Notes under the pieces: generated by a model
What the model was told of the DNA's origin: nothing
What the model saw: the letters and a program-made list of their open reading frames with translations, nothing else
Databases searched by the model: none
Position numbers and translations under genes: made by a program
Assembly (NCBI RefSeq): GCF_963921235.1
Contig: NC_086101.1
Location: 15,934,001-15,998,000, forward strand
Reading direction: 5' to 3'
Origin: Mobula hypostoma
Lineage: Eukaryota
DNA: 64,000 bases
In this document: piece by piece, positions 8,701 to 46,433 of the stretch
How positions within the stretch are numbered: position 1 is the first letter of the stretch
Layout: the number at the start of each line of letters is the position of its first letter

Positions 8701-8989
8701 CAGCTCAATTTAAGATTTCTCAGCTACATTTTCGAATCTCTCCGGGATCTCCCCACTTCCCCTGACCTCAGCAAATGCTTGCTTTCTTACCTGATTTGTG
8801 GTTTCTTCAGGCTGGAGGCTACGTTCTGCTGTGAATTAGAGAAAGAAGCAAATGAGGCATCAAAAGCATCAGTAAACTTTGTCAGAGTAAGACACTTGCT
8901 CGATCATTCAAGTGGATTGAGGATGATCTGCTAACTTGGTGCCATTTTCTGGCACCAATCCTATATCCTTTGATGTTTTACCACCACTG

Positions 8990-10651: not shown

Positions 10652-10682
10652 CTGTCAAATTCAGCTCCTCGTCGCTGTCATC
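10652..10682 (-). CDS. Candidate 31-nt exon (DDSDEELNLT, phase 0 to 1)
   Basis: cttcctttggcgggcag acceptor and ACAG|gtgagc donor. Only phase-0 entry is stop-free. Confidence 0.3.
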
Positions 10683-16430: not shown

Positions 16431-16669
16431 ATCTAGCTCTCAGAACCTTACGCTGCCTTTGACTTTGTTTGTTAGCCCCCGTTGACTTATCTTCCCTTTA
16501 GAAAACTTGTTCATCTTTGGGATGTATCTCTTTTGTTCTTCCCACATTACCCCCAGAAGCTCCAGCCATTGTTGCTCTGCTATCATACCTGATAGTGACC
16601 CCTTCCAATCAACTTTGGCCAGCTGCACTCTCATGCCTCTGTAACTCCCTTTACTCCACTGTAATACTA

Positions 16670-19560: not shown

Positions 19561-19569
19561 ACGTGCAAT

Positions 19570-20330: not shown

Positions 20331-20559
20331 CTATTAAAATATAACATCTCAATTCTGTATTCATCACCCTTTTTGATTTTGACCCCATGTTACAGTTCCA
20401 CCCATCCCACTGACTACAATTTTGCTCTGTCATATACATAATCTCATAACACAATGTATCGACTTGAATACCAACTACTCCATCCGCAGCCCTATCACTA
20501 AGGTTCCCATCCCCTTGCCGACTTAGCTTAACCCCTCCCCTACAGTTCGAGCAAACAGG

Positions 20560-21060: not shown

Positions 21061-21293
21061 CATCCAGAGACAGGTTAAAGTTCACACCAATTATCAGAGA
21101 CTCTGAGCAAGGTAAAACCCCCTTCCCTGGGGAAATCCCACTCGCCACATTGACACACACCACCCCTCACATTGTACACCATGACCCTCTCTACCTTATT
21201 CCCTTCCTACCATGATGTCAGGGCACCAGGCTTCACCGCTTCATCCTGCTAGTCCAGTCTGCTCATTGGATGGACAACAAGCTGTACCGTTAC

Positions 21294-21359
21294 CTGATAA
21301 TGAACTCTCCTCAGCAGAGGGTCAGTTTGCGGATGGCGATCCATCTCCCTGCTTCCCTG
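21294..21359 (-). CDS. Cytoplasmic exon 4: [22 protein letters not shown] (phase 0-0; NAGNAG acceptor gives 66 or 63 nt)
   Basis: ctattcag/cag acceptor, CAG|gtaacg donor, 99-nt upstream intron. Confidence 0.75.
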
Positions 21360-24300
21360 CTGAATAGAGCACGCAGACAGCAGTGTAACACTGGACCCTA
21401 GGTAATGCTCCATTTGGGCCAAGCCAACTAATCTAGCGGTGGCTGAATCCATACTCACATTTGCATTGGTGGGCAGATCAATTGCTCTTCTGGCTGGAAC
21501 TCCTAAAGAAGGAAAATTAAGCCATGTCACAGATCATAACACCGTAAGACGTAGGAGTATAAGACCCAAGACATAGAAGCAGAATTGGGCCATTCAGCCC
21601 TTCGAATCTCCTCTGCCATTCCATTCTGGATGATTCAGGATCCCACTCAACCCCACACACCTGCCTTCTCGCCATATCCTTTGATGCCCTGACTGATCAG
21701 GAAACGATCAACTTCTGCCTTAAATATACTCACGGATTTGGCCTCCACTGCAGTCAGTGGCAGAGCATTCTACAGATTCATTACTCTCTGCCCCCACCAA
21801 AAAAAAGCATTACTCTGTTTTAAAGGGTCGCCCCTCAATTTTGAGGCTGTGCCCTCTAGTTCTGGATACACCCACCCAAGGAAACATGCTCTCCACTTAA
21901 ACCCTATCTAGTCCTTCCAACATTTGGTAGGTTTCAATGAGATCCTCCCACCTCCACATGCTTCTAAATTCCAGTGAGTACAGGCCCAAAGTTGCCAAAT
22001 GCTCCTCATGTGTTAACTCCTTCATTCCTGGAATCATCCTTGTGAACCTCCTCTGGAATCTCTCCAATGACAACACGTCCTTTCTGAGGTATGGGGCTCA
22101 AAACTGTTGACAACTGTTGACAATACTCCAAGTGCGGCCTGACTAGTGTCTTATAAAGGATTAGCATTATCTCCTTGCTTTTAGATTCGATTCCCCTTGA
22201 CGTGAATGCCTACATTGCATTTGACTTCTTTACTACAAACTCAACCTGTAAGTTAACCTTCTGGGAGTCTTGCATGAGGATCCCTAGGTCCCTATGCACC
22301 TCTGATGTTTGAATTTTCTCCTTATTTACATAATAGTCTGCACTATTGTTCCTTTTACCAAAATGCAGTATCATTCAGTTCCCAACACTGCATCCCATCT
22401 GCCACATTTTTGCCCATTCTTCCAATTTGTTGCAAATGAATTGCTTCTTCAGCGCTATCTACCCCTTCACCTACTTTTCCACAAAGCCATCAATTCAACT
22501 ATCTAAATCATTGACAAACAATGTGAAAAGCAGCGGTCCCAATACTGACTCCTGAGGAGCACAAGTCAACAATGGCAGCCAACGAGAAAAGGCCCTCTTT
22601 ATTCCCACTCACTGTCCTGTGCCTGTTAGCCATTCCTTTATCCATCCATATCTCTTTCCTTTAATGTATTGGATTTCATCTTGTTAAGCAGCTTCATGTG
22701 TTGCACCTTATCAAACGCCTTCTGAAAATCCAGGTAAATGACATCTACTGCCTTTCCTTTGTTCACCCTGCTTGTAACTTCCTCAAAGAACTCTAACAGA
22801 TTTCCCAGGCAAGATTGCCCTTCACAGAAACCATGCTGACTTTGACTTACTTTATCATTAAACTCATCCTTAACAATGGACTCCAACAGTTTTCCCAACC
22901 ACTGGGGTTAGGCTAACAGGCCTATAATTTCCTTTCTTTTGCCTTCCTCTCTTCTTAAAGAGTGAAGTAATATTTGCATTCTTCCAGTCCGCTGCGACCA
23001 TGCCAGAATCAAGTGATTGTTGAAAGATCATGCCCAATGCAAGTTTGATTCTATGACATCAAGAGATTTTAAAAATTCCAAGGTCAAGTTTATTGTTCGA
23101 TGCACAAGTACAGTATGTGCATGTACAGGTGCAATGAAAAGCTTACTTGCAGCAACATCACAGGCATCAGCATCAGGTACACAACATTCACAGAAAAATA
23201 TATGTTAAACATAAAACATACACAACATAGAAACATGAGAAAGTCTGCAGATGATAGAAATCCAAAGTGACACACACAAAGTGCTGGAGGAACTCAGCAG
23301 GATGTATGGAAAAGAATAAACTGTCGATGATTCAGACCGAGGCCCTTCTTCAGGTCTGAGAAGGAAGGGGGAAGATGCCAGAATCAAAAGATGGGGGTGG
23401 GGGGTAGAGAACGAGTCTAGTTAGAAGGTGTTAAGTGAAGCCAGATGGATGGGAAGGGTCAAGGACTGGAGAAGAAAGAATCAGATAGAAGAGAAAAGTG
23501 TACCATAGGAGGAAGGGAACCTAGAGGGAAAGAATAGGCAGGTGAGAAGAAGTAAAAAGTCTGAATGGAGAATAGAGGATGTTGGGAGTTGGGGCGGAAT
23601 TTGCTTCCCAGAAGGAGAAATCAATATTCATGCCATCAGATTCGAGGATACCCAGACCAGGAATAAGGTTTTACTCCTCCACCCTGAGGTTGGCCTCCCC
23701 TTGGCACAAGAGCAGGCCATAGATCGACACGTCAGAATAGGAATGGGATATTGGAATTGACCTATTTGGCCACCAGGGAGTCCCACTTCTTGTAGATGGT
23801 GAGGAGGTGCTCGATGAAGCAGTCCCCCAATTTACAATGTGTCTCCCCAATGCAGAGGAGGCCATATCAGGAGGACCAGACGCAATAGATGTCCCCAGCA
23901 GATTCGCACGTTAAGAGTTGCATCACCTGGAAGGACTGTTTGGGGCCCTGAATGGAGGTGAGGGAGGAGGTCTAAGGACAGGTGTTGGGTTGGCATGGAC
24001 TAGATTCGTCGAAGAATAGAATAGAATTGAACCTTATTGTTGTTGCTCAAGACAACGATATTGTGGTGCTACTCCAGTCCGTGCAAAACAGATATTTACA
24101 AAGCATGAGGTACGGCTTAATTTAAAAAAAAACAGTATTTACATGCAACAAGTGACTTTGCTAGTCCATAACACACAGAAGCCACTGTCAGTATTAGAAG
24201 AACCTGTTTTTGTGTTATGGTGCTCAATGGCTCCAATGATTTAAGAGAAAACCCAACTAGAACAAATACAAAGTCCACTGTAGTGTTACGTTGTTATACT

Positions 24301-27300
24301 GAGGTGGGAAGTAGGGTTGTGCAGCTTGGTTCAAGAAACGAATGTTCAGTGATCAGATAAGGAATAATATCCATGGATTCCATTAGGAAAGGGTTCCGGC
24401 ACCTTGTGTGGAGTTAGTGGGAGCTCCCTGGGTCAATAGAGGAGGCAGAGAAAACTTAAGGTCAATAACAGTGATTAACAGAGTCGTGGATACTCATGAC
24501 AATGGACAGAATGGAGAGAATTGAAACATGCACAGGTGGAAGAGATGAGCGTAATTAGACACCAGTACTTTATTTAGTCCAGCATTAATTGTGGGCTGAA
24601 ATCCTGTTCCTGTGGTCTACTGTTTGACAAACTATGATGAACAAAGGCTGACAAACAACCAGAGTGCAAAAGAAGATAAATAATAAATATAAATACTCAA
24701 GTAATATTGAATTTGAAAGATCTTGAAAGCGAGTGTATTGGTTGTGGAGTCAATTTAGCGCTGAGGTGAGTAAGATTGTTCACATTGTTTCAGGAGCCTG
24801 ATGGTTGCAGGAAAGGGTTTGAAACCTGGGATCCATGGACCCTTTGCCTAATGGAATTGGTCCATGGCATTAAAAATGATTGGGATCGCGTGTTATCAGG
24901 TAATAACTGTTCCTGAACTGGTAGCATGGGACCAAAGGCTTTGGTACTTCATGCTTGATGTTAGTAGTGAGAAGACAGCATCGCCTGGATGGTGGGATCC
25001 TTGATAATGGATGCTCCTTTCTTGTGGCAGAGCTCCTTGTAAATAAGGTGAAGCAGAGACTTTCACAAAAGAGGAAAAGCACAGAGATGAACACTTGACG
25101 CTTTTCTAAGCAAAATGTCCACGTCCTCCCTCATGGCGAGCAATCCCCACTTATGACATGCAGTCTCTCTCGCTCTCCACTCTTTTATTCCCTCTACCCA
25201 TCCCCTGCTCACAGAAATCCAATTTATGTTTTCAATTTTGCCCAGTTCTGTTGAAAACCCGATTTTCCAGAACCTTAACTCTGCTTGATTCTCTGCAGAT
25301 GCTGTTTAACCTGCTGAATATCCCAACATTCTCTGATTTTACTTCAGATTTCCAGCATCTGCGGGCTTTTTACGACTTACCGTCTCAGGTCCTTCCTCCA
25401 ATTGGTCTGAAGTTAAATCATCTGTAAAATTAATGATGTGCATATTAATGCAAACACTGGCAGATTTACAACTATCCTCTGCGTTCTACAGGCACCCACA
25501 CTCTCTGTGTAAAGAACTTCCCTCTGATCTCTGCCTCTTGTCATTTTGTACTCCTCTGTCAATTCACATCTTTCCTCCTTCACTCTAAAGAGAAAAGCCC
25601 TGGCTCACTCAGCCTATCCTCTCCAATCCAGGTGGCATTGGCCATGTAAATAATGATGTGGTGCGAACACAGTGGAAACATTAAAAACCTACAGCACAGT
25701 ACAGGCCCCTTCAACCCACAATGCTGTGCCGAGTATGTACTTATTTTAGACATTACCAAGGGTTACCCATAGCCCTCTGTTTTCTAAGCTCCATGTACCT
25801 ATCCAGGAGTCTCTTAAAAGACCCGATCGTTTCCGCCTCCACCATCGTTGCCGGCAGCCCATTCCACGCACTCACTACTCTCTGCATAAAAAAAAAACTT
25901 ACCCCTACCATCTCCATACAACTTAACACAATAAACAAAGGGTTTTATAGAGATGCAACATTACTTCACAGTTCTTAAACTCAATCTCCCAATTAATGAA
26001 GGTCAACACACTATACACTTTTGTCATGTCTCAATCAACCTGCACGGCAACTTTGAGGGATCTATGGATGTGGACTCCAAGTTCCCTCTGTTCCTCCACA
26101 TTGCTAGAAATTCTGCCATTCACCCTGTATTCTGCCTTCAAATTAAGGCTTCTGAAGTGAATCACTTCCCACTTTTCAGGATAGAATTCCGCGTGCCATT
26201 CTCAGCCCAGCTCTGCATCCTATCAATGCCCTGTTGTACTCCTTGCCACCATTTCACACTATCCACAACTCCACAACCTTAATGTTATGTACAAGCTTAG
26301 AAACACATCCTCCCACTTCAACTGAATCATTAACAAAAATCACGAAGACCGATGGTCCCAGAACAGATCGCTACAGAGCACCACAGTTCACCATTCTCCA
26401 GGCAGAATAGACTTCACCTTCAACTACCCTCTGCCATGTACAGGCAAGCAAATTCTGAATCCCCTCTGTGGGCAAGGCAATCCTGAATCGATATTCGAAT
26501 TACCAAGGGCACGAGGCTAAGTAGTGGAAGGCGGGGTTAATACTGATGGGTAATCACAGGTCAGCATGGAGAAGAAGGGATGAATGGCCAGGTTCTAGGC
26601 TGTATGACTCTCCAACTAACATCACAGACAAATCTGCTTAATACACTCACACGGTTTGGCTCTGGGGGCTTTTACTTACCCGATGTGGTGCTGTCATTCA
26701 GAGTAGATAGCTCCTGTCTGAAGAGAAAAAGTGGAAAATGTTTACTCCCTGTGTGTCCCTTTACATTGCAATGGAACACATTCTGTAAAACACAAGCGTG
26801 CAACAAGCACTCACCTTTGAACCCGGAGAGAATCTGTGAAGGGAAGGAGAGAAGAAAGATGCTGATTAATCAATAAACACAAGTGATTCTGCAGATGCTG
26901 GAAGTCCAGCGATCCACACACAAAATGCTGGATGAACTCAGCGGGTCAGGCAGCATTGATGGAAAGCAATAAACGGTCGATGCTTCTGATCAAGAGCCTC
27001 CAACAGGACTGGAAAGGAAGGGGGTAGAAGCCAGAACAAGAAGATAATGTGAGGGGAAGGGAGTGGAGTACAAACTGCCAAGTGATAGGTGAGACCAGGT
27101 GAGGGGGAAGGTGGGCAGGTGATGGAAGGCGCATGAAATAAGAAGCTGGGGGGAGGGTGATAAGTAGAACAGGTGAAGGGCTGAAGATGAAGGAATCTGA
27201 CAGGAGAGGACAGAGAATAATTGAAGGGAAGGACAAGGGGCATCTGAGGAAGGAGATGATTGGGTAAGGAGAAGGAAAGGGGCTGAGAGGGTAACCAGAA

Positions 27301-30300
27301 TGAGGAATGGAAAAAGAGAGGGGAGAGAAGCTGAGAGAAACCAATGTTAATGCCACCAGGTTGGAGGCTACCTACATGGAATATGAGGTGTTGCTCCTCC
27401 ATCCTAAGTTTGACCTCATTGTGGTGGTAGAGGAAGCCATGGACAGTCATGTCAGAATGGGAATAGGAAGTCAAATCGAAATGAGTGCGCTTGTTCTCAG
27501 TTCCACCCAGGAGGGAAAGGTGGCTTCAGAATGCACTGGTTTCCCACTTAGCACTCATAACCGAGTCAGTTGTATGGACAAATCATATGGATACTTGCTT
27601 CCATTGGGCAACGCAGGGAGTATAAAAGATAATGATACGGCTTTATAAGGAATTGGTTAGGTCACAGCTGGAGGACTGTACACAATTCAGGTACCACGCT
27701 GAAGGAAGGATGTGATTGCACTGGAGAGGGTGCAAAGACAATTTACAAGGATGTGACCCACTGCCACTCACATAGAGATAATTGTTCTTAGTATCTTCAT
27801 TCTTGTTTATGTTATTTTTATTTAGGGACACAGGGCAGTAACAGACCCTTCCAGCCCAACGAGACTGCTCTGTGCAGTTACACCCATGTCACCAATTAAC
27901 CTGACAACTTGTATGTCTTTAGGATGTGGAGGGAACTGCTGCACCCAATGGAAACCTACGCATTCACGGGGAGAACACACAAATTCCTTAGAGTCAGTGG
28001 AAGGAATTGTGCCACCCCTTTGCTGGCACTGTAACAGTGTTACAGGAACCACAATGTCACCGCGCCACCCCACTATTCTACCTTCACTGTCCCTGATGAG
28101 CATTTCTTTTTGCACTACGATGCATTGCACTGCTCTCCTTGCACCAGTCTGTTGTCTTGTCCTCATGGCTGTATTTGATGTTGTATTTAATATTACCACG
28201 TACACCAGTGAGCTTCAAACAGGGAAAGGATTTCATCGCATCTTGGAGCGGTTGACAATAAATTTATCCAGCCTAGTCATCAGAGAAAGCTGCAGAATTG
28301 GGCACAATTACAATTAGAGGCCAGCTGACTGGGCCTTGTGCCTCTTGATCGCACTGATGTTCAATACTGGGACCCACCAACTCGAGACAGTCCGGTATTC
28401 ACGGGTGTCCTTCGTGTAAATTTTCACCCACATTACTAACCTTTGTGCACAGAGGAGAGGCCTAAACTCTGAATGTACTTCATCGCCATGACAGTATCAC
28501 TGGATTTCAAGCACGGAGCAGAGTCCTGGACTCGGAGTGCACCTTCTCAACTATCCACATCACTGGGTGCAGAGTGGAGTGCTGACCTCTACCTCCTTCA
28601 TGTCCCTGTCTATGTCCATACACCCTAATCTGACCCCTAACTCCATTCACTGTCCTGAAAACCATTCCTACAAACTTAAAAGCACAACAAAGTCTGGGCC
28701 ATGATCTCAAGAGATACCACAGCTCGCACCATTATGACCAAAGATTTATGGGCCATCTCAGTCAGCAGAGATGAGTTGGGCTGAAGGGCCTGTGTCTGTG
28801 CTGATGACTCACAGATCTACTACCTCAATTGCCCCACTTATCTGCACATGCTGGTGAACCCCTTGGGCTTTCCAGATGTTCCTCTCCTTTAAGGATATAA
28901 GGCATTGGTCAAAGAACATTGGCAGTGTTGTGTGCAGTTTTGGGCTTCATATCTAAGAAACAATGTGCAGGTGTTGGAGAGGATCCAGAGGAGAATGACA
29001 AAACAGATCTGGGAATGAAAGAGTTAACGTATGAGGATTGCAGACTCTGAGCCGTACTTGCTGGAGTTTAGAAGAATGGTGGGGAGGGATCTTACTGACA
29101 TCTATCAAATACTGAAAGGCCTAAACAGAGTGTATGTGGAGAGAATATTTCCAATATTGAGAGAGTCTTGGACCTGAGGGCACTGCTCAGAATAGGATAT
29201 AAGGAGGAGTTTCATTACCCAGAAGATTCATTACCACAGATGAATGTGGAGGCCAAATGATTGGGTATATTTAAAACAGAAGGTGATAGGTTGAGTATTG
29301 GTTTCTAAGGTTATGGAGGAAGGCAGGAGAATGGTGTTGAGACGGAAAAAAATCCCTCAATGTGGAATGATGGAGTAAATTCGTTGGGCCAAATGGCCAA
29401 ATCCTTATATGTCTGATGATCCTAAACTGGCCATAGAGGTAAAGAATTCAGTCTCTTTACTTTCCGCTCTGCGTAGTTTTCGAAGAAACAGGATGCTGAC
29501 GAGCAGGATGCTCCCTTGTATTCCAAAGACCGTTAACAGGATCACCAGGACAATCGTGACAGGTTTCATTTTGCCTGTGGGAGAGAAAACAACTCAGAAC
29601 ACACGAGCACATATGGGCCATTTGGCCCTTCGAGACTGGTGAAGCACACAATGATATGGCAGCTGACCTGAAAGTGATTAACCCCAGTGGTGAGATCGTT
29701 CCTGTCCCTGCCACACCCCCTCCTCACTATTCCAGGGCAGGAAGCACAGGGAAGTTGCTCTTCCAATAATTGTATAGGATGACCAAAAGGTGATAAAGTC
29801 ATATCAAACGTTGATCTTCGTCTAACATTAATAAGTCCTACACTAATCCCATTTACATTTTCCTATTAATTTTACTGATAACTGATCCTCTCCACCTTCT
29901 CTTCAAATCCATCCAACTTTTTCCACTTGGCAACACACTGGGGGCAACTTACAGCAATCAATTAAACCACTGACCCACACATCCTTGGGGTGTGGGAGAA
30001 AACACCAACAACCGGAGGTGGGGGTTGGCCACACCATCACAGGAAGAATGCATTGAGAATAGGATAGGACAGTGTGTAACCCACTACCCCACCGGGTCCC
30101 AGAGGGGGATAGGACAGTGTGTGACCCACTGCCCCTCCGGGTCCCAGAGTGGGGTTCGACAGAGTATAACCCACTGCCCCAGCAAGTCCCAGAGGGGGAA
30201 GAGGGTAGTGTGTGACTGACTGCTTCACCTCGACCAAGAGGGGCAGAGAACATCTTGTAACTCACTGCCCCACCCAGTACCAGAGGGAAGAGGACAGTGT

Positions 30301-36300: not shown

Positions 36301-39300
36301 TGAATGGTGGTAAGGGAGGAAGTGTAAGGGCATGTGTAGCACTAGTTCCGCTTACAAGGATAAGTGCCAGGAGGGAGATCGGTGGGGAGGGATGGGGGGG
36401 ACCAATGGACAAGGGAGTCGCGTTGGGAGCGATCCCTGTGGAAAGCAGAGAGAGCGGGAGAGGAAAAGATGTGCTTAGTGGTGGTGGGATCCCGTTGGAG
36501 GTGGCGGAAGTTACGGAGAATAATATGCTGGACCCAGAGGCTGGTGGGGTGGTAGGTGAGGACAAGGGGAACCCTATTCCTAGTGGGGTGGCGGGAAGAT
36601 GGAGTGAGAGCAGATGTGCGTGAAATGGGGGAGATGCGTTTGAGAGCAGAGTTGATGGTGGAGGAAGGGAAGCCCCTTTCTTAAAAAAAAAGGAGGACAT
36701 CTCCCTCGTCCCACCACTAAACACATAGTTAAGAAGGAAAGAAAAGTTTATGAGAGGTTCAAGAAACTTGGTACTGTTCGAGCTCTAGAAAATTACAAGG
36801 TTGCTAGGAAGGAGCTTAAGAATGAAACTAGGAGAGCTAGAAGGAGCCACGAGAAGGCCTTAGTAAGAAGGATTAAGGAAAACCCCAAGGCAGTTTACAA
36901 GTATGTGAAGAGCAAGGGGATGAGCCATGTGGGAATAGGACCAATCAGGTACAAAAGTGAAAACATGTGCATGGTGTCGGAGGCAGAAGCAGAGGTACTT
37001 AATGAAAACTTTGCTTCAGTATTCACCAGAGGAAAGAAACTTGGCAATTGTAGGGATGACGTACAGCAGACTGAACCACTTGAGCATATAGACCCTAAGG
37101 AAAAGGATGTGCTGGAGATTTTGAAAAGTATTAAGTTAGATATGTCTCTGGGACCAGACGAAATACACTCCAGGCTACTGTGGACAGTAAGGGAGAAGAT
37201 TGCTGAGCCTCTGTTGATGATCTTTGCATCACTAATATGGATTAGTGAAGCACTAGAGGATGAGAGGGTTGCAAATGTTGTTCCCCTGTTCAAGAAAAGG
37301 AGTAAAGATAACACAGGAAATTATAGACCAGTGACTCTAACTTCAGTGGTGGGCAGGTTGTTGGAGAAGATTCTGAGAGGCAGGATTTATGAGCATTTGG
37401 AGAGGCATAACCTGATTAGGGATAGTCAGCATGGCTTTGTCAAGGGCAGGTCATGCCTTACAAGCCTGATTGAATTCTTTGTGGATGTAACAAAATACAT
37501 CGATGATCGAAGAGTAGTGGATGCACTGCATATGGATTTCAGTAAGGCAGTTGATAAGGTTTCCCATGCAAGGCTCTTTCAGAAATTAAGACAACCTGGG
37601 ATCCAGGGAGACTTTGCATTGTGGATTCAGAATTGGCTTGCCTAGAGAAGGTAAGGGGTGTAGATGGTTTGTATTCTACATGGAGGTCAATGATGCAGTG
37701 TTCTGCAGGGATCTGTTCTGGGACCCTCTCCTCTTTGAGAGTTTTATAAATGACCTGAATTAGGAAGTAGAAATGTAATTTTGTACGTTTGCTTTTGACA
37801 CAAAAGCTGAAGGTGTTGTGAATAGTCTGGAGGGTTGTCAGAAATTACAACGGGACATTGATAGGATACAGAACTGGCTGAGAAATGGCAGATGGATTTC
37901 AACTGAGATAAGTGTGAAGTGGTTCATTTTGGTAGGTCAACTTTGAAGACAGAATATGAAATTAATGGTAAGACTCTTGGCAGTATGCCGAATCACAGAG
38001 ATCGAAAGGACACTCAAAGCTGCTGCGCAGGTTAACGGTGTTGTTAAGAAGGTGTATGGTGTGATGGTCTTCAACAACCATGGATTGAGTTCAAGAGTGT
38101 GAGGTAATGTTGCAACTGCAGTATTAGACATTGGGCAGTCCCCACTTGGGATTCTGTGCTCAGTTCAGGAAGGATGTGGATAACATACAGAGTGTGCAGA
38201 GGAGATTTACAAGGATGTTGCCTGGATTGTAGAGTGTACCTTATGAGAATAGGTGAGTGAATGTGGCCTTTTCTGCCTGGAGGGATGAAGGATGAGACCT
38301 GACCTGACAGAGGGGTATAAGATGATGAGAGGCTTTGATCGTGTGGATAGTCAGAGGCGTTTTCCCAGGACTGAAGTGGCTATCATGAGAGGGCACAGTT
38401 TTAAGGTGCTTGGAAGTAGGTAATGGGGGTTGTGAGAGGTAAGTTTTTCACACAGAGAGTGGTGAATGTGTGGCACGCACTGCCAGTGATGGTAGTAAAA
38501 ACAGATAAGGGACTCTTAGATACAGGGAGCTTAGAAAATAGAGGGCTATGTGGTAGGGAAATTCTAGGCAGTTTCTAGAATAGGTTACATGGTCGGCACA
38601 ACATTGTAGACTGAAGGGCCTGTAAAGTGCTGTAGGGTCTATGTTCTATGGTCTAGGTCTCTGATCAGTTTCTGCCTCTCCAGGGAAAACAGCACACGTT
38701 CGGCCTTGACCAGCCATGACCAGATTCTGTTTGTGTGGTGTGTCTGATTCGCACTTACAAGGAGATACTTGAAGGCTGACTTACCTCTCACTGTGAGATT
38801 CGTCCCCGCCCCACATATTTCCCATTCCTTAGTCTCTAACTTGCAGAAGTACATCGCAGAATCACTCAGCCGCACGTGCTTCAGTTGCAGGGAGACATCT
38901 GTGCTGTTAGTGGAGGGATCATCCCCTTGAGGTCTCAAGAAGCGGCCTCTGTACTCTGCTGTTTCATTGGTCACTTCTGTTCCATTTCTGGCACCCTTGA
39001 CCCAGTGGTGCGACCATATCTTACTCGTGGAATTGTGTCTGCATGGAATAACCACCGTCTCCCCTTCTGTGGCAACGATGCTGGACTTGTCCTGAATGAC
39101 CACAAACTTCTCAGCACCAATGCCTGAAAGCAGGGAGCAAACTTTAAAATGGGTAAATTGGTTTATTATGGTCACATGTATTGAGGTACAGTGAAAAGCT
39201 ACGTTTTGTCTGCCATCCATACAGATCATTTTATCACATCAATTCAATCAGTTCGTGCAAAGGAGGAACAATAGCAGAATGGGTAATAAAGTGTTACAGT

Positions 39301-42300
39301 TACAGGGAAAGTGCAATGCAGGCAGAGAATAACATACAAGGTTGATTGTGTTGTATTTTAATGCACACAGCATAGGTAATAAAATGGACGATCTTGAAAT
39401 TCAGCGACAGATCAGCAAATATGATGTTATGGCCATCTCTGAAACTTGGCTAAAGGATGGCTGCCATTGGGAGCTTAACTTCCAAGAATGTATGGTATAT
39501 TGGAAAGATAGGTTAGTAGGCAGAGGGGGTGATGTGGCTCTGTGTATAAGAAATAATATTAAGTCATTAGAAAGAGATGACACAGAATTGCAAGGTGTAC
39601 AGTCTCTATGGGTTGAGTTAAGAAACGGCAAGGGTAAAAGGACCATAATGTCAGTTGTATACAGGCCTCCAAAAACAGCACCCGGGATGTGGATTACAAA
39701 TTACAGCAGAAGATACAAAAGATGTGTCAAAAGGGCAATGTTATGATAATCTTTCTTTCTTTAGTAATCTTTTTATAGATTTAAAAGGAGCAAAAATACA
39801 ATCAAGTGGCGAATTATCTCAAATATATATATCAGTAGCAGTCCAACTGAGATTAAGGTAGACATTTTCAAATTTATCGATATTGTTAAACAAGTATAAA
39901 ATATATAATAAAAAAATGAAAATAGCAATTCTCCTCTTATCAGTTTATGAAGAGAAAAGAAAAAAAAATTGAGTTTTAAATGAAGAGAAAAAAAATCCCA
40001 CTACACTATGTTAAAAAAAACAAAAAAAAGCGACTGGGCAGTCCATTTTGAGGATACGACCAAAAAAAAAAAGAAAGAAAGACTTTCTGATCAAATCTAA
40101 AATTTTGAAAAAATATTGAAAGAGTAATCAATCAAATTAAATGAAAACATTGGATAAAAGGTCCCCAGATTTGCTCAAGTTTAAAGGATGTATCAAATGT
40201 CCGATTTCTTATTTTCTCTAAACTTAAACAGGACATAATGGAGGAGAGCCAATAAAAGACTGTCGGTGGATTAGAATCCTGCCACTTCAATAAAATGATT
40301 CTCCAAGTCAGTAAGGTTTGAAAAGGCTATCATACGTTGAGCGTAAACAGGAATACTTCCTGCTTCCAGTGGGATAATCCCCAAAACTTGCCGTTAGCAA
40401 ATGAGGTTGTAAATCCAGATCCAAAACTTTTGATAGCATTTTAAAAACATCTCTCCAAAAGTTATCTAGCTTGATACAAGACCAATACATATGAGTTACA
40501 GTGGGCAGCTCAGTATTACATCTGTCACAAATAGGATTGATATTGGAGAAAATATGCACATTTATCCTTTGACATATGGGCCTGATGCACCACTTTGAGC
40601 TCTATCAAGGAATGTCGGGCACCAATAGATGAGTTATTAACCAAATGAAAAGTTTTACTCCGTTGATTATCTGAAAATGACTCTTGAAATTCCGATTCCC
40701 AAGCGCATTTAATTTTATCAATAGATGTCATTCGTGAGTTCAATAACGGTTTATAGATTATATCAACCCTTTTTGAAATGGTTTAAACTGAAAGAGAGCA
40801 TTTGTCATATGAAGTGGATAAGCAACAAATATGGCAACAAACCATGTAAAAAGTTCCTAATTTGTAAATATCTAAAAAAGTGTACATCAGATAAATCATA
40901 TTTATCCACGAACTGAGAAAAAGACCTTAAACAGTCCTCTAAAAACAAATCTGAAAAAGTTATTATTCCCTTGGTTTCCAAATTTAAAAAAGCCTTATCC
41001 AAAATTGATAGTTTAAAAATATTGAGATGGATATTACCAGAAAGGATAAAATTATTTAACTCAAAAATCTACGAAACTGAAAGCAAATTCTTAACGTATG
41101 TTTATTAATGGGATTAAAATCTTGTCTACTAATCTTAGAAAACAAAAAGGGAAGAGGAGCTCCCAGTAAAGAGGTCAAAGAGAATCCTTTCACAGAGTTT
41201 TCCTCCAAATCCAACCATGAAGGACATTAATGTGTACCTGAATAGTGAATCCAAAAAGTAATATACCGAATATTAATTGCCCTAAAGTTAATTCTAAAAT
41301 TTGGCAAAACTATACCACCATCCTTTTTTAATTTCTGCAAACAGGGTTTACTCAATCTAGGATTTTTATTTTATAGGGTTCCGTTAGTCTCATGAGACAA
41401 TCGATTTGCGCCTTGGAAAGTTTCCAGGGTGCAGGCCTGGGCAAGGTTGTATGGAAGACCTGCAGTTGCTCATGCTGCAAGCATTCCCTCTCCACGGAAC
41501 CGATGTTGTCCAAGGGAAGGGCATTGGGACCCATACAGCTTGGCACCTGTGTCGTCGCAGAGCAAAATGTGTTTAAGTGCCTTGCTCAAGGATACAACAT
41601 GTTGCCTCAGCCAGTGCTCGACCTAGCGACCTTCAGATAACTAGACGAACGCCTTAACCACTTGGCCATCCTAAAAACTAGGATTTTTATTGTTCCCAAT
41701 ATAAGATAAGGTTATAGAATCTATTCTATCAAAAAACTTTTTAGGAACAAAGGAAGGAACTGCTTGAAATATATATATAAGAGTTTCGGTAAAACTATCA
41801 TTTTATTATCATTAATTCGAACTATTAATCATAATGTCATAGGAGACCATTTAGAAAGATTTGTTTGGTGTAGTCAATTAATGGAAAAATATATTTATAG
41901 AGATCCTCAAAATTTTAGTAATTTTAATACAAAGATAGATAAATTAATTTTTAGCAATACTAAATGGTACTTGATGATTTGGATACGAGTAATTATAAAT
42001 AGGAAGTAACTCACCTTTATGTAAATCTAATTTATACTCAGTAAAACAACTGAATTCAGAAAATATAGATAACATAGAAGGAACAGATTTCCTAGGATCT
42101 GAAATATAAACTAACAGGACATCTGCATATAAAGAAACCTTGTGTATTTTGTCCACTCTTTTAATACCCTGAACAGTGTTAGAATCTCTAAGAGCAATAG
42201 CAAGGGGTTCTAAAGCCAAGTTAAATAATAAAGGGCTAAGACAACATCTCCGCTGTGTATCTCTGTATAATCTAAAATAGGGAGAACTTTTTTATTATTA

Positions 42301-45300
42301 GTTATAACCGCAGCTATAGGAGCATAATAGATCAAATTAATCCAGGAAATAAATCCCGGGCCAAGATGACATCTTTCCAAAGCCTCAAATAAGTAAGACC
42401 ACTCCACCCTATCAAGGGCTGTCTCCGCATCAAGAGAAGCAACACATTCAAATTCTTTCGATGGAGAAGAATGAATAATATTTAATAATCTTCGACTGTT
42501 AAAACGGCAGCCGAGGATATTAAACCCGATTCAGATAGTGATGTCGTTTCCGGTTCTGATCCTGCCATCAGCCGGAGTTGGCATTGGGGGTAGAAACTTT
42601 GAAAGAATGAGGTGGTAAAACGTGAGCAGAAATATTTTAACAAAGGGTGTGATTGGGCTATGGACTGGATAATTCAGCAATTGCTATTTTAAAAACATTA
42701 GACAATACCGTACAGTAACGGGCCCTTCGGTAAACAATGTTGTGACAAACTAATTGGTGACCAGATGTCCAATTAGACTAACCCTTCCCAACATAATGTC
42801 CGTATCCCTGATTTCCTGCACATCCATGTGCCTGTTTAAGAGTCTGTTCAATGCCCTATTGTATCTGCCTCTACCTCGACCACCACCAGTGCATTCCAGG
42901 TACCCGCCATTCTCCGTGTAAAACAATTGCCCACACATCTTTGAATAGACCCCCTCTCACTATAAATGCATTCACTCTGGTATTAGACACTTTTCCCTGT
43001 GAAAATGATATCAACTGTCTGCTCTGTCCGTGTCTCTTATAAATTATAAACCTCTACCAGGTCTCTGCTCAGCTTCTGCTGCTCCAGAGAAAACAACCCT
43101 CATTCGTCCAACCTTCCCTTATAGCACCTGCCCTCTAATCCAGACGGACTGCAGGTAAACCTCTTCTGCACCTTTTCCAAAACCTCACCCTGTTTTTATA
43201 ACGGGGTGAACAGAACTGAATGCAATACCAGATGCAAACTAAATAATTATGTAAAGCTGCAATGCAACTTCCCAACTCTTGAACTGATTTCTTTGAGTAA
43301 TTATGGAAAATAAGCCGTAAGTCTTCTTTTCCATCCTATTAACGTATCTGGCCCCCTTCAAGGGAGCTTTGGACTTGGACTCCAAGAGATCCTTCTGCTC
43401 ATTTGTATTGTTAAGGGACTTGCCACTAACAGCGTACTCGGTGTATACATTTGAATAATATTACTGTTCAAGAGCAAACAGGGAGGTATTTGACTGGGAA
43501 GTGTTTGCCAGGCTCTGGAGAGAAGCTGAAGCATGTAATTGTTGGTGCATGGACTCAGTACAGACAGAATGGGCCGAGTGTCCCCTTTTGAAAGGTCAAC
43601 TCTCAATCTCCCTCCCTATATTCTGCCTGAAATACGAGTTCCTCCAGCATTGTGTTTCGTTCATTCCAGGTTTCAGCATCTGCAGCCTCTTTGGAATTGG
43701 TATTAGTTTATTATTGTCCCATAATCTGAGGTACAGTGAAAAACTTGTCTTGCATACTGTTCATTCAGATCAGATCATTACATGGCGCACGGTGAGGTAG
43801 TACTGTACTCGGTAAATCAATAGCAGAGTAATGTGTAACAGTGACAGAGAAAGTGCAGTGTAGGGAGACAATGTCATAACGAGGTAAATTATGAGGTCCA
43901 GAGCCCATCTGATCATACCTGGGAACCAGGTAATAGTCTGATAACAGTGGGATAGAAGCTGTCCTTGCGCCTGGTAGTTTGTGGTTTCAGGCTTTTGTAT
44001 CTTCTGCCCGGGGGAGAGGGGAGAGGAGAGAATGTCCTGGGTGGGTGGGGTCCTTCATTATGTTGGAAGCTTTACTGAGGCAGCAAGAAATCAGAAGACA
44101 GAGTCCTTGGAGGGAAGGTTTGATTTGTTAGTACTCACCCCCTCTCCCACATTTTCTGTTCTGGAACGATTTTATCATTATCCAGTTGGTGAAATTCTAA
44201 TAATGAAAATTTAAAACCTGCAGATGCGGGAAATCTGTGGTAAAAAAAAACTAGATATGCTGGAAACGCTCAGCAGGTCAGGTAGCATCTGTGGGAAGTG
44301 AAACAGAGTTAATGCTTGAAGGGGAAGATCTTTCCTCAGCACTGGGCAAAAATTGTTTACAAGATATTTCTTTCTTCTTGTTTACCCTCCTTCTCTTCCC
44401 TGAGGATTGGTCACAGATCTGAACATTTTGCTGCTTCTCTCCCCACAGTAGCTGACTGACCTGCTAAGTGACTCCAGCATTTTCCAGCCTTGACCAAATT
44501 CTGTTCGGGTGGTGGGTCTGATTTGCTTAGACAAGGAGATACTTGATGATTAGCTTACCTCTCACTGCGAGATTCGTCCCTGCCCCACACATTTTCCATT
44601 TTATTGCCTCCAACTTGCAGAAGTACATCCCAGAATCACTCGGCCGCACGTCCTTCAGTTGCATAGAAACATCTATGCTGTTAGTGGAGGGATCACCCCC
44701 TTGAGGTTTGAAGAAGCGGCCTCTGTACTCTGCTGTTTGATTGGTCACTTCTATTCCATTTTGGGCACCTTTGAACCAACGGTATGACCATACCTTATTC
44801 GTGACATTGTGTCTGCATGGAATAACCACCGTCTCCCCTTCTGTGGCAACAATGCTGGACTTGTCCTGAATGACCACAAACTTCTCAGCACCAATGCCTG
44901 AAAGCAGGGAGCAAACTTTAAAAATTGGTAAATTGGTTTACTGTGGTCACATTTTGTTCTTCATACATATCATTTTATCACATCGATCCAATGAGTTAGT
45001 GTAAAGGAGGAACAATAACAGAATGGGGAATGAAGTGTTACAGTTACCGAGAAAGTGCGGATCGGAGCCTGGAAAAGAGGAACCTAGGAGTACGAGTGCA
45101 CAGCTCATTGAAAGCGGCAGACAGGTAGTGAAGACAATGTTCAGTACGCTGAGCTTCAGTCAGAGCTTTGCGGACAGGAGTCCAGAAGTTATGTTACTGT
45201 TGTACAAGTCGTTGGTGAGGCTGCATTTGGAATATTTTGTACAGAATTGGCCACCCTGTTGCAGATGTTATTAATTAGAAAGCGCGCAGATATGGTTTAC

Positions 45301-46433
45301 CTGGATGTCGTCAGAATTTGGGGGCCCGAGTTACAAGGAGAGGTTGCATAGACTAGTACTTTATTCTCTGGAATGTAGGAGATTGAGGGGGTCACCTGAT
45401 AGGGATATGAAACACAATAAAGGGCATAGATATTCTGAAAGCAGCATTTTACACCGGTGGGGGGGGGGGGAGGGTGTTGTTAACAACAAGAGAGCATGGG
45501 TTTAAGAATAGATGAGAGAGTTTTGAAAGGGATATTAGACAATTTCTTCACACAAAATTGGTGGTGTTACGTGGCTGAAATGAGCTGACAGAAATGGCGG
45601 TGGCGGCGAGTAAACTACAAATATCTTAAAGCCTTGTAGATGAGTACATGGGTCGGAGGGATTTTAGGGAGCTGTGGGCCAAACGCGGGCAGATGGGACG
45701 AGTTCGCTGGTTAACACGATCGACAAGGACGAGTTGGGCCGAAGGGCCTGTTTCGGGGCTAGGAGTCCACAATCACGGAGGCTAAAATTGTACAGAATAT
45801 CCCAAGTGCGGCCTCACGGTCACTGGTACATCTGTAACAAAACCTCCCAATTCCCACACTCAAGAGATTCTGCACATGCGGGAAATCCAGAGTAACAGGA
45901 CGAACTCGGGAGGTCAGGCAGCAGTTGTGGAGGGGAATAACCAGTTGACGTTCCGGGCTGAGACCCTTCATCATGATTGGAAAAGAAAGAGGGAGAAACG
46001 AGAAGTCTGCGTCCTCAGTGTTCGACCTGGAATTCAGCCCCCCCCCCCCCCCCCCCCCCGTCGGCTAGTCAGGGGGTCGATGCCGGAAGCCTGGAGACTA
46101 GAAGCCCGAACGTTGTTCTCGGAATTGGTGGACTGTCCGTGTGTGCGCGTGGGAGGGAGGAAAGGGGCTTGTTTTGTTGCGTTTTGTTGTGCTTTATGTT
46201 GTTCTGCCGACATTGTGGACATTAATGTTGGCGCCGGAATGTGTGGCGACCCTCGCGGGCTGCCCACAGTGCCTCCGTAGGTGTGTTGGTTGTGAACGCA
46301 AATGAAGCAGACGAACCTTCCCGCTTTTCCCGCGCTGCCCATTGCCTTCTCCCCCAAGCTGTAGCTGTAAAGGAACAGAAAGCTACTTACCGGAGGAGAC
46401 GGTCAGGAGCCACAGAATGGCGCCCACCTCCAT
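21294..46433 (-). CDS. NCR3: NKp30/NCR3-family receptor gene model: leader, V1, V2, V3, TM and four cytoplasmic exons (444 codons; 3' end unresolved)
   Basis: Nine exons with GT-AG sites and matching phases (43+339+339+330+114+19+38+44+66 = 1332 nt, no stop). V domains share NKp30 hallmarks: V.Q...I...EG....C, E..N.T.EY.GR, D...Y.C and a germline G-x-G J-like strand. The symbol marks family membership, not proven orthology. Confidence 0.8.
21459..21502 (-). CDS. Cytoplasmic exon 3: [15 protein letters not shown] (44 nt, phase 1-0)
   Basis: ttttccttctttag acceptor and AAT|gtgagt donor. Confidence 0.8.
21550..23050 (-). mobile_element. Decayed CR1 RT and 3' UTR
   Basis: [23 protein letters not shown] and [10 protein letters not shown] (22638-22898). 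Confidence 0.85.
23230..23990 (-). mobile_element. Penelope-like 3' fragment
   Basis: Same GIY-YIG and pLTR sequence as 6590-7430, more decayed. Confidence 0.8.
24700..25050 (-). mobile_element. Rex-Babar-like 3' fragment
   Basis: Reverse complement of the element type at 33940-34500 (atcattaaggatccccaccatccag). Confidence 0.55.
25460..26480 (-). mobile_element. CR1 3' fragments
   Basis: [14 protein letters not shown] and the 3' UTR shared with 14640-14900. Confidence 0.75.
26680..26717 (-). CDS. Cytoplasmic exon 2: [13 protein letters not shown] (38 nt, phase 2-1)
   Basis: ctttttctcttcag acceptor and CGG|gtaagt donor. Stop-free in phase 2, which the 19-nt exon upstream supplies. Confidence 0.8.
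26815..26833 (-). CDS. Cytoplasmic micro-exon 1: NSLRVQ (19 nt, phase 1-2)
   Basis: tctttcttctctccttcccttcacag acceptor and AAG|gtgagt donor; 97-nt intron to the next exon. Confidence 0.8.
26880..27480 (-). mobile_element. Penelope-like 3' fragment
   Basis: [35 protein letters not shown] plus pLTR. Confidence 0.85.
27830..28070 (-). mobile_element. Probable SINE
   Basis: Similar ~240-bp units at 46870-47080 and 50400-50560. Confidence 0.45.
28260..28740 (+). mobile_element. Highly decayed Rex-Babar/L2-like RT fragment
   Basis: actgatgttcaatactgggacccaccaa aligns with the LxTGxPQG region of 32380-32420. Confidence 0.4.
28885..29430 (+). mobile_element. CR1 3' fragment
   Basis: Decayed YKALV...CVQFW...LE.IQRR motifs and 3' UTR. 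Confidence 0.7.
29461..29574 (-). CDS. Transmembrane exon: [38 protein letters not shown] (114 nt, phase 1-1)
   Basis: gttttctctcccacag acceptor and GAAA|gtaaag donor; about 26 hydrophobic residues followed by the basic stop-transfer RKLRR. Absent from the ORF track in this frame. Confidence 0.88.
30060..30360. repeat. 45-bp tandem repeat, about 6-7 diverging copies
   Basis: gagggggataggacagtgtgtgacccactgcccctccgggtccca units in the V3-TM intron. Confidence 0.85.
30622..30951 (-). CDS. NCR3: Ig VJ-type exon V3 (membrane-proximal; most NKp30-like)
   Basis: 330 nt, phase 1-1, ttctcctttcccatttcag acceptor and CAC|gtgagt donor. [60 protein letters not shown]...[29 protein letters not shown]. 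Confidence 0.9.
31203..31480 (+). mobile_element. tRNA-derived SINE
   Basis: Head ggcgcgtggccaagtggttag (A box) ... ggttcgagt (B box); no complete cloverleaf; related copies elsewhere in the window. Confidence 0.8.
31700..32170 (+). mobile_element. CR1 3' fragment
   Basis: [29 protein letters not shown]. Confidence 0.8.
32230..32990 (+). mobile_element. Rex-Babar/L2-like RT fragment
   Basis: [22 protein letters not shown]...[17 protein letters not shown]. Confidence 0.8.
33170..33620 (-). mobile_element. Decayed Penelope pLTR fragment
   Basis: ggaggaactcagtgggtcgggcagca terminal motif. Confidence 0.6.
33940..34690 (+). mobile_element. Rex-Babar-like 3' end with UTR
   Basis: [10 protein letters not shown]...[21 protein letters not shown]...ENFYRCT. 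Confidence 0.8.
34686..35185 (+). repeat. Local duplicate block B (paralogous to 42515-43060)
   Basis: Colinear match gatattaaacccgattc...ttggcattgggggtagaaacttt...ataaacctcta; lies in the intron 3' of V2. Confidence 0.85.
35567..36715 (-). mobile_element. Penelope-like element (RT C-terminus, GIY-YIG, pLTR)
   Basis: Reverse-complement match to 7560-8640. Confidence 0.9.
36720..38650 (+). mobile_element. CR1 ORF2 RT and 3' UTR
   Basis: ORF 36905-37645 [12 protein letters not shown]...[19 protein letters not shown]; (ttctatg)n-like tail at about 38635-38650. Confidence 0.92.
38785..39123 (-). CDS. NCR3: Ig VJ-type exon V2
   Basis: 339 nt, phase 1-1, ctccctgctttcag acceptor and GAG|gtaagt donor. 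[63 protein letters not shown]...[26 protein letters not shown]. Confidence 0.92.
39335..39735 (+). mobile_element. CR1 endonuclease fragment
   Basis: [16 protein letters not shown]...ISETWL...VVYRPP. Confidence 0.85.
39735..42500 (-). mobile_element. L1/Tx1-like LINE, 5'-truncated ORF2 and 3' end
   Basis: [11 protein letters not shown]...[15 protein letters not shown] (RT) and PICDRC...THMYWSC (C-terminal CCHC); AT-rich. Confidence 0.85.
41375..41670 (-). mobile_element. tRNA-derived SINE inserted in the L1-like element
   Basis: Matches 1700-1880 and 6035-6190; tRNA-like head at about 41640-41670. Confidence 0.75.
42515..43060 (+). repeat. Local duplicate block A (paralogous to 34686-35185)
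   Basis: Colinear match to block B; lies in the intron 3' of V1. Confidence 0.85.
44559..44897 (-). CDS. NCR3: Ig VJ-type exon V1 (membrane-distal)
   Basis: 339 nt, phase 1-1, ctccctgctttcag acceptor and GAG|gtaagc donor. [63 protein letters not shown]...[26 protein letters not shown]. Confidence 0.92.
45130..45760 (+). mobile_element. CR1 3' fragment
   Basis: [19 protein letters not shown]; [21 protein letters not shown]. Confidence 0.8.
46038..46059. repeat. C22 homopolymer (G22 on the sense strand of intron 1)
   Basis: Direct count. Confidence 0.9.
46391..46433 (-). CDS. Leader (signal peptide) exon [15 protein letters not shown]
   Basis: gcaacgATGG start, hydrophobic core, phase-1 donor CCG|gtaagt. 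Splicing to GIGA of V1 gives a plausible cleavage after G-I-G-A. Confidence 0.88.

What the first reader, a model, noticed from the sequence alone, without database searches (positions are those of the whole stretch)
21294..46433. Hidden three-V-domain NKp30/NCR3-like receptor with a non-activating architecture
Nine exons scattered over 25 kb of repeats join into one 444-codon frame: signal peptide, three non-rearranging VJ-type Ig domains, TM and a tail of at least 60 aa. Established: mammalian NKp30 has one VJ domain, an Arg in the TM for CD3zeta/FcRgamma pairing and a short tail; shark NCR3-family genes exist, are diverse and MHC-linked. Here there are tandem V domains, a neutral TM and a multi-micro-exon tail with a Tyr. 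This suggests an inhibitory or adaptor-independent counterpart in a paired-receptor system. I cannot tell whether this architecture has already been described.
Basis: partly seen in the sequence, partly recalled or inferred. Interest (0 to 1): 0.88.

Follow-up and report, generated by a model that had tools for sequence, protein, structure and literature searches.

The report
Three-V NKp30-like devil ray receptor
This ray DNA holds a real gene for a cell-surface immune receptor whose outer part can be read as three antibody-like units related to the human killer-cell receptor NKp30; it belongs to a large family that public annotation already models in rays and sharks under misleading names.

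Summary
The exons are real. On the minus strand lie one leader, three V-set exons (V1, V2, V3) and one transmembrane (TM) exon. A partial RefSeq model from Mobula birostris joins leader-V1-V2-V3 at the same boundaries.

A family profile and an AlphaFold model both rank human NKp30 as the best single-domain match, with SIRP second. The TM has no charged residue.

RNA contigs support only V3-to-TM (in a relative) and TM-to-19-nt micro-exon-to-next exon (exact). No RNA shows V1, V2 and V3 joined, and V1 had no coverage.

The gene does not end at 21294. Homologous tail exons continue to about 8791. A neighbouring paralogue carries YTPM, an ITIM (IQYAVI) and GYDEL. Here two of those tyrosines are replaced (Cys, Asp) and no ITIM exon was found, so "inhibitory" is weakly supported for this gene.

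RefSeq already models NKp30-like proteins with 2, 3 and 5 V domains in rays and sharks, and this scan noted the same family elsewhere in this genome.

Verdict: a new variant of the NCR3 family, of moderate interest.

The parts
46391..46433 (-). Leader exon, 43 nt. ATG sits in a good Kozak context. It encodes the signal peptide [14 protein letters not shown] and ends in phase 1.
   Evidence: It is identical to the leader of P0001 and P0003. It is the only leader in the window.
44559..44897 (-). V1 exon, 339 nt, a VJ-type V-set domain. Its J-like motif reads [10 protein letters not shown].
   Evidence: Pfam V-set E 6e-11. 95% identical to domain 1 of P0003. No RNA coverage in X1-X3.
38785..39123 (-). 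V2 exon, 339 nt, a tandem duplicate of V1: 89.7% nt identity, 23 of 113 residues differ.
   Evidence: 95% identical to domain 2 of the M. birostris model. Only a 96%-identical RNA contig lies on it.
30622..30951 (-). V3 exon, 330 nt, the divergent membrane-proximal V domain. Its J-like motif reads IGEGVWLTV.
   Evidence: Pfam V-set E 4e-7. NKp30 is its best PDB match. Its donor is joined to the TM exon in X4/X5 contigs.
29461..29574 (-). TM exon, 114 nt. An uncharged helix ([27 protein letters not shown]) is followed by RKLRR.
   Evidence: An X1 contig matches it exactly over 112 nt. Joint 30622/29574 is seen in X4/X5. The four differences listed for organism B are three synonymous changes and one Val-to-Ile change seen in X5 only; 3-4 further differences were not listed.
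26815..26833 (-). 19-nt cytoplasmic micro-exon.
   Evidence: Exact match to the loose end of the X1 contig that follows the TM exon. AG/GT flanks.
26680..26717 (-). Tail exon, 38 nt ([12 protein letters not shown]).
   Evidence: Its first 11 nt are matched exactly by the X1 contig. Homologous to the P0003 tail.
25381..25421 (-). Tail exon, 41 nt ([14 protein letters not shown]).
   Evidence: tblastn against P0003, 85% over 13 aa, with canonical splice sites. A like exon follows the TM directly in organism B.
21459..21502 (-). Tail exon, 44 nt ([14 protein letters not shown]). It is the homologue of the family's IYxPM exon with Tyr replaced by Cys.
   Evidence: Best hit of the tail HMM, with canonical splice sites.
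21294..21356 (-). It is open in frame after 25381 but has no detectable homology to family tails.
   Evidence: If 21502-21459 is included upstream, the frame hits a stop inside this exon.
10652..10682 (-). Tail exon candidate, 31 nt (DDSDEELNLT). It is the homologue of the family's DDGYDELN exon with Tyr replaced by Asp.
   Evidence: tblastn and HMM hits collinear with the other tail exons, with AG/GT flanks.
8791..8828 (-). Tail exon candidate, 38 nt (AERSLQPEETTNQ). It is the homologue of the last 13 residues of P0003 and ends at a GT donor.
   Evidence: 85% identity over 13 aa. The HMM hit is collinear with the other tail exons.
38710..39314 (-). Duplication unit around V2. It pairs with 44484-45058 around V1.
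   Evidence: blastn 88.5% over 469 nt plus 88.7% over 97 nt. No second leader lies in the unit.

Best explanation
This is a real, at least partly transcribed member of the large NKp30 (NCR3)-like receptor family of the lesser devil ray.

Architecture (inferred from the gene structure):
- It most likely encodes a type I membrane protein: signal peptide, three tandem single-exon VJ-type V domains, almost no stalk, an uncharged TM helix and a cytoplasmic tail assembled from many short exons.
- V1 and V2 arose by tandem duplication of one V exon. V3 is an older, divergent membrane-proximal type.

Mechanism (inferred):
- The ectodomain binds a ligand through NKp30-type V domains.
- With no basic TM residue it cannot recruit CD3zeta, FcRgamma or DAP12 the way mammalian NKp30 does.
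- The family tail carries YxPM, an ITIM and YDEL. In this gene two of those tyrosines are substituted and no ITIM exon is detectable.
- This copy is therefore more likely a weakly signalling or non-signalling (decoy-like or co-receptor-dependent) variant than a classical inhibitory receptor.

Shown versus inferred:
- Shown: the exons, phases, family relationship, uncharged TM, and the TM-to-tail and V3-to-TM splices.
- Inferred: inclusion of all three V exons in one mRNA, the tail beyond 25381, and the function.
For: - Exon anatomy, and a single leader and single TM in the window.
- Pfam V-set for all three V exons.
- The family profile gives NKp30 76 bits as the best single-domain match, with SIRP at 53-60 bits.
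- The AlphaFold model (pLDDT 85) has NKp30 3NOI_A as its top structural match.
- The M. birostris RefSeq model P0001 reads leader-V1-V2-V3 with the same junctions.
- V1-type and V2-type domains each group across species, so the duplication predates the species split and both copies stayed intact.
- The first 93 nt of V1 and V2 differ at 2 sites, against 19 of 132 in the adjoining intron (p = 0.002).
- An exact RNA contig covers TM + micro-exon + next exon, and a spliced V3-TM joint is seen in a relative.
- The listed TM changes in that relative are almost all synonymous.
- Tail exons are collinear with paralogue tails, with Tyr-to-Cys and Tyr-to-Asp changes.
Against: - No RNA joins V1-V2-V3. 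V1 has zero depth in three RNA runs, and the only contig on V2 is 96% identical and mosaic.
- The M. birostris model is partial, and its RNA support is unknown.
- V1/V2 dN/dS is 0.69, and exon identity is about equal to intron identity outside the 5' third.
- Each domain has an unusual extra Cys. In V1 and V2 it replaces the J-motif aromatic residue.
- The tail downstream of 25381 is unresolved, so an ITIM from an undetected exon cannot be excluded.
Confidence: 0.5

Rival explanations
1. The gene makes two-V proteins. V1 and V2 are alternative or partly skipped cassette exons, so products are leader-V1-V3-TM or leader-V2-V3-TM rather than a three-V chain.
For: - All V exons are phase 1 to 1, so any subset stays in frame.
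- Separate genes in the same species carry V1-type + V3-type (P0003) or V2-type + V3-type domains (P0002).
- An RNA contig confirms a direct V1-type to V3-type splice in the paralogue.
- V1 has no RNA coverage, while a V2-like contig carries 46 nt upstream that do not come from the V1 exon.
Against: - V1 and V2 have identical acceptor sequences and near-identical strong donors.
- The M. birostris model includes both.
- Three-V models exist in Heterodontus.
- The V2-like contig is not identical to this gene.
Confidence: 0.25
2. This is the reader's reading: an intact inhibitory receptor whose tail carries a working ITIM, paired with an activating counterpart.
For: - The TM is uncharged.
- Paralogues and shark relatives share a conserved tail with (I/V)(Q/H)Y(A/T)x(I/L), IYxPM and Y(D/E)EL.
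- Other first-stage notes report activating/inhibitory pairs in this cluster (unchecked).
Against: - Two of the three family tyrosines are substituted here, and no ITIM exon was found by tblastn or HMM.
- Joining the VHYQ exon to the next recognisable exon gives VHYQDD, which is not an ITIM.
- The VHYQ exon has no detectable homology to family tails.
- A relative's transcript ends nine codons after the TM exon.
Confidence: 0.15
3. This is a decaying copy, a transcribed pseudogene or a gene under relaxed constraint, within a rapidly turning-over multigene cluster.
For: - Signalling tyrosines are lost.
- Cys replaces the J-motif aromatic residue in V1 and V2, and V3 has an extra Cys.
- V3 sits on a long terminal branch (0.2 against 0.02-0.06 for paralogues).
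- V1/V2 dN/dS is 0.69.
- RNA coverage is very low.
Against: - All twelve recognised exons keep open frames and canonical splice sites.
- The V3 start is identical in the M. birostris orthologue, so its divergence is old and has been maintained.
- The TM peptide is conserved through mostly synonymous change.
- The 5' third of V1 and V2 is far better conserved than the intron.
Confidence: 0.1

Closest known systems
Mammalian NKp30 (NCR3)
   Same: It has a single-exon VJ-type V domain. It is the best single-domain match by profile (76 bits) and by fold (3NOI_A, TM 0.80). Both are type I membrane proteins.
   Different: NKp30 has one V domain, an Arg in the TM that pairs with CD3zeta/FcRgamma, and a short tail without signalling motifs (PMC6514059). 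Here there are three V exons, an uncharged TM and a long multi-exon tail.
Shark NCR3 family genes (Kinlein et al. 2021, Immunogenetics 73:333; eight nurse-shark subtypes, MHC-linked)
   Same: Both are elasmobranch, multigene, divergent NKp30-like VJ domains. A Stegostoma relative (P0013, 48% identical to V1) is named NCR3-like by NCBI.
   Different: The paper could not be read here. I therefore could not check whether it describes tandem-V forms, neutral TMs or ITIM tails.
RefSeq gene models of the same family: M. birostris partial 'SIRP-alpha-like' (P0001), M. hypostoma XP_062903900 (2 V) and XP_062903898 (5 V), Heterodontus XP_067865773 (3 V), Scyliorhinus XP_038671255 (2 V)
   Same: They share the same V-domain family, the same leader and tandem V domains. 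P0001 has the same leader-V1-V2-V3 junctions. Several share the conserved tail.
   Different: The paralogue P0003 keeps YTPM, IQYAVI and GYDEL, and this gene does not. V-domain number varies from 1 to 5. NCBI's names (SIRP-like, pIgR-like, turtle-like) do not reflect the NKp30 relationship.
SIRP-alpha/beta paired receptors
   Same: They have a VJ-type N-terminal V domain, which is the second-best sequence and fold match. The paired inhibitory/activating logic is the closest functional analogy.
   Different: SIRPs have one V and two C1-set domains. Here V3 is spliced directly to the TM, and no C-type exon is present.
Teleost NITRs (novel immune-type receptors)
   Same: They are germline-joined V domains with a J motif, in large clusters with inhibitory (ITIM) and activating (charged TM) members. 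This comparison is from general knowledge and was not tested here.
   Different: NITRs are a teleost family with V or V+I domains. No sequence comparison was made here.

Membership tests
NCR3 / NKp30 family | Non-rearranging V domain with the J segment in the same exon (G-x-G motif before the exon's donor) | tested here: met
   V1 reads [11 protein letters not shown]2 reads [10 protein letters not shown] and V3 reads [10 protein letters not shown], each in one exon ending at a GT donor. The aromatic residue before G-x-G is replaced by Cys in V1 and V2 and by Ile in V3.
NCR3 / NKp30 family | V domain closer to NKp30 than to other IgSF V domains | tested here: met
   The family profile scores NKp30 at 76 bits as a single domain, SIRP at 53-60 bits and the one Ig V multi-domain hit shown in detail at about 17-23 bits per domain. 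Foldseek's top hit is 3NOI_A. V3 alone has NKp30 as its top hit. V1 alone slightly favours SIRP. No explicit tree with NKp30, CD28, TCR or NITR references was built.
NCR3 / NKp30 family | Single V domain ectodomain | tested here: not met
   Three V exons lie between one leader and one TM. The orthologue model joins all three.
NCR3 / NKp30 family | Basic residue in the TM for ITAM-adaptor pairing | tested here: not met
   The TM helix has no Arg, Lys, Asp or Glu.
NCR3 / NKp30 family | MHC linkage | not testable with these tools
   No MHC gene lies in the window. Another first-stage note places DDR1 about 146 kb away, which I did not check.
NCR3 / NKp30 family | Binding of B7-H6 | not testable with these tools
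   This needs a binding experiment.
SIRP family | One V domain followed by two C1-set domains | tested here: not met
   V3 is spliced directly to the TM exon across a 1,047-nt intron. No other Ig exon is in the window.
ITIM-bearing inhibitory IgSF receptors | (S/I/V/L)xYxx(I/V/L) in the cytoplasmic tail | tested here: inconclusive
The tail up to 25381, of which RNA supports only the part up to about 26707, has no Tyr. The homologue of the IYxPM exon has Cys and the homologue of the YDEL exon has Asp. No ITIM exon was found.

The most novel reading that the evidence does not exclude
Rays have turned the ancient, MHC-linked NKp30-type VJ exon into a modular building block. Exon duplication makes receptors with one to five tandem V domains. 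A shared multi-exon tail is trimmed motif by motif, giving inhibitory, silent and possibly activating versions of the same ectodomain. This gene would then be a three-V, signalling-poor (decoy-like) member of such a system, which the papers I could read do not describe.
Probability: 0.25. Interest if true: 0.6.

Novelty: new variant of a known kind. Interest (0 to 1): 0.4.

Why it matters
NKp30 is the one NK-cell receptor traceable across jawed vertebrates. Its germline-joined VJ domain is often discussed as a relative of the V exon that the RAG transposon invaded.

A ray family that strings this domain into tandem arrays, with uncharged TMs and a conserved tyrosine-motif tail, would show that the NKp30 lineage was once a diversified receptor system with inhibitory-type and perhaps activating members, rather than a single activating receptor. 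It would also provide natural variants for testing what the V domains bind.

For this particular gene the value is modest. It is one more member, its three-V product is unproven, and its tail looks degenerate.

Tried and rejected
- **V1 and V2 as two separate genes:** rejected. There is only one leader and one TM in the window, and no leader inside the duplicated unit.
- **The V2-like RNA contig as a k-mer chimera of V1 and V2:** rejected. V1-type and V2-type letters interleave within 23 nt.
- **'QYDRIYPAFSE' at 18982-18950 as the missing ITIM exon:** rejected. It scores E 5.9, and no acceptor gives that frame because stop codons lie just upstream.
- **'SFASFSNS' at 8855-8814 as the SLKTFSNS exon:** rejected. 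It is out of order and overlaps the last exon in another frame.
- **SIRP and pIgR membership (NCBI's names for relatives):** rejected on domain architecture and per-domain scores.
- **Searches that gave nothing useful:**
  - The look-up of encoding contigs returned no DNA for P0001 or P0003.
  - A protein search with the TM exon found nothing.
  - A V1 word search found only one shark protein.
  - Rfam and tRNA scans of the heavily covered repeat at 41264-41657 were empty.
- **Papers not held:** Kinlein 2021 and Flajnik 2012.
- for three tail exons was corrected.
Full report
**1. What is in the sequence**

The gene lies on the minus strand.
- A 43-nt leader exon starts at an ATG at 46433 and ends at a GTAAGT donor.
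- Three exons of 339, 339 and 330 nt follow: V1 44897-44559, V2 39123-38785 and V3 30951-30622.
- A 114-nt TM exon follows at 29574-29461.
- Each has an AG acceptor and a GT donor, and each starts and ends in phase 1.
- All three V exons match Pfam V-set (E 6e-11, 2e-10, 4e-7).
- A tblastn of each exon against the whole window finds no further leader, V or TM exon. So these are not two adjacent genes.
- The introns carry LINE reverse-transcriptase and endonuclease fragments and tandem repeats.
- Joining these five exons with 26833-26815, 26717-26680, 25421-25381 and 21356-21294 gives an open frame of 442 codons.

**2. The V1/V2 duplication**

- V1 and V2 sit in a duplicated unit of about 600 bp (44484-45058 against 38710-39314, about 88.5% identical).
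- The exons are 89.7% identical in DNA and differ at 23 of 113 residues. dN/dS is 0.69.
- The differences are not spread evenly. The first 93 nt differ at 2 sites, against 33 of 246 in the rest of the exon and 19 of 132 in the adjoining intron (p about 0.002).
- That part of the domain is identical in all ray relatives. This fits protein-level constraint on both copies, or gene conversion.

**3. Relatives**

- A word-index search with V2 returned one protein, P0001. It is a partial RefSeq model from Mobula birostris named 'SIRP-alpha-like'. It reads leader-V1-V2-start of V3 with the junctions proposed here, and its V3 start is identical to the window's.
- An exhaustive HMMER search with V1 found further relatives:
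  - M. hypostoma XP_062903900 (P0003): leader, V1-type, V3-type, TM and a long tail.
  - M. hypostoma XP_062903898 (P0002): five V domains.
  - A three-V protein from Heterodontus (P0004, with isoforms).
  - A two-V protein from Scyliorhinus (P0005).
  - Single-V shark proteins, one of which NCBI names NCR3-like (P0013).
- In a maximum-likelihood tree, the window's V1 groups with domain 1 of P0003 and P0001 (98/88). V2 groups with domain 2 of P0001 and domain 1 of P0002 (90/87). V3 groups with the other ray V3-type domains (100/100), on a long terminal branch.
- The V1/V2 duplication is therefore older than the split of the two Mobula species, and both copies stayed intact.

**4. Family assignment**

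- Single-sequence searches of the PDB are ambiguous for V1 (SIRP 6e-9, NKp30 4e-8). They favour NKp30 for V3.
- A profile of 19 family V domains (A1) gives NKp30 76 bits as one domain and SIRP 53-60 bits. The one antibody multi-domain hit shown in detail scores about 17-23 bits per domain. Polymeric Ig receptor chains reach about 76-77 bits only as whole-chain sums.
- An AlphaFold model of V1 (pLDDT 85) has NKp30 3NOI_A as its best Foldseek match (TM 0.80, rmsd 2.5 A). SIRP-alpha is close behind at rmsd 3.7-4.0 A.
- I accept 'NKp30-like V domain'. I did not build a tree with outside reference families.

**5. RNA evidence**

The two read-laying runs used Logan contigs.

In organism A:
- One X1 contig matches the TM exon exactly over 112 nt. 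It continues with 30 visible letters that match 26833-26815 (a 19-nt micro-exon) and the first 11 nt of 26717-26680 exactly. This shows transcription and two splices.
- A second contig, in X2, joins a V1-type 3' end reading YGAGTILAVR, as in P0003, to a V3-like exon. This ties organism A to M. hypostoma, and a follow-up note in this scan also names the genome as the lesser devil ray.
- It also shows the paralogue's two-V splice.

In organism B (X4, X5):
- A joint links 30622 to 29574, which is V3 to TM. V3 is about 99% identical and the TM exon about 93% identical in DNA.
- The differences the tool listed leave the TM peptide the same, apart from one Val-to-Ile change seen in X5 only.
- There the TM exon is followed by a tail2-like exon that reaches a stop after nine codons.

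Evidence against the three-V reading, or neutral to it:
- The V1 exon had zero depth in three runs.
- The only contig on V2 is 96% identical and mosaic. It carries V1 letters at 5 of 15 diagnostic sites, interleaved with V2 letters.
- Its 46 upstream letters do not come from the V1 exon.
- So no RNA seen here joins V1, V2 and V3 of this gene.

**6. The tail**

- Mapping P0003 and a five-sequence tail HMM onto the window gives collinear hits at 26722, 25431, 21502, 10688 and 8832.
- With splice sites, the exons are 26717-26680, 25421-25381, 21502-21459 ([14 protein letters not shown]), 10682-10652 (DDSDEELNLT) and 8828-8791 (AERSLQPEETTNQ, ending at a donor).
- The gene therefore extends about 12.5 kb beyond the finding's end.
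- Relatives from rays and sharks share IYxPM, an ITIM of the form (I/V)(Q/H)Y(A/T)x(I/L), and Y(D/E)EL.
- Here the first Tyr is Cys and the last is Asp. No ITIM exon was detectable.
  - It is in frame only if 21502-21459 is skipped.
  - If it is joined to 10682-10652 it gives VHYQDD, which is not an ITIM.
  - If 21502-21459 is included, the frame stops inside the ninth exon.
- The true 3' structure needs cDNA.

**7. Interpretation**

- *Shown:* a structurally intact NKp30-like gene with three V exons and an uncharged TM, with part of it transcribed and spliced as predicted.
- *Inferred:* a three-V product, from the orthologue model, identical strong splice sites and long retention of both duplicates.
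- The TM lacks the basic residue that mammalian NKp30 uses to pair with CD3zeta/FcRgamma (PMC6514059). So an adaptor-dependent activating role is unlikely.
- The family tail looks inhibitory. This copy has lost two of its three motifs, and a related organism's transcript (possibly the orthologue's) has a very short tail.
- I therefore rate 'weakly signalling or non-signalling variant' above 'classical inhibitory receptor'.
- Extra cysteines in all three domains and the long V3 branch are compatible with relaxed constraint. The intact frames and splice sites, and the conserved TM peptide, argue against a dead gene.

**8. Novelty**

- Tandem-V NKp30-like proteins with 2, 3 and 5 domains are already modelled in RefSeq for several elasmobranchs, under names that hide the relationship.
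- This scan has flagged the same family at many other places in this genome. One follow-up there also noted that RefSeq already models such genes.
- In the searchable literature I found no description of tandem-V NCR3 receptors. The key paper (Kinlein et al. 2021) is not held, so prior description cannot be excluded.
- I class this as a new variant of a known kind, of moderate interest.

Noticed in passing
window 9001-10091: A 1.1-kb minisatellite (36-nt unit, about 31 copies, 77% matches) lies in the intron between the last two recognisable tail exons.
   Followed up: no
window 41264-41657: RNA contigs at 95-99% identity pile up to a word depth of 6,000-25,000 in three runs, inside the V1-V2 intron. 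This is a highly expressed repeat family. It has no Rfam or tRNA match.
   Followed up: partly
window 30062-30358: A 45-nt tandem repeat (6.6 copies) lies in the V3-TM intron. It is matched by many short RNA contigs at 93-97% identity, which presumably come from other copies.
   Followed up: no
window 38947-39124: An RNA contig from organism A is a mosaic of V2 and V1 letters (96% identical to V2). It looks like an allele or a gene-converted paralogue of the V exon.
   Followed up: partly
window 29461-29574 and 25381-25421: In a related organism (X4/X5) the TM exon is spliced directly to a tail2-like exon, skipping the 19- and 38-nt exons in frame. A stop follows after nine codons, which gives a very short cytoplasmic tail.
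   Followed up: partly
window 44559-44897, 38785-39123, 30622-30951: Each V domain has a cysteine that relatives lack. The Tyr of the J-motif YGxGT is Cys in both V1 and V2, and RESD is KECD in V3.
   Followed up: no
window 36905-37645, 22641-22907, 39342-39746, 32361-32762, 41947-42291: LINE fragments (reverse transcriptase, endonuclease) lie on both strands inside the introns.
   Followed up: yes
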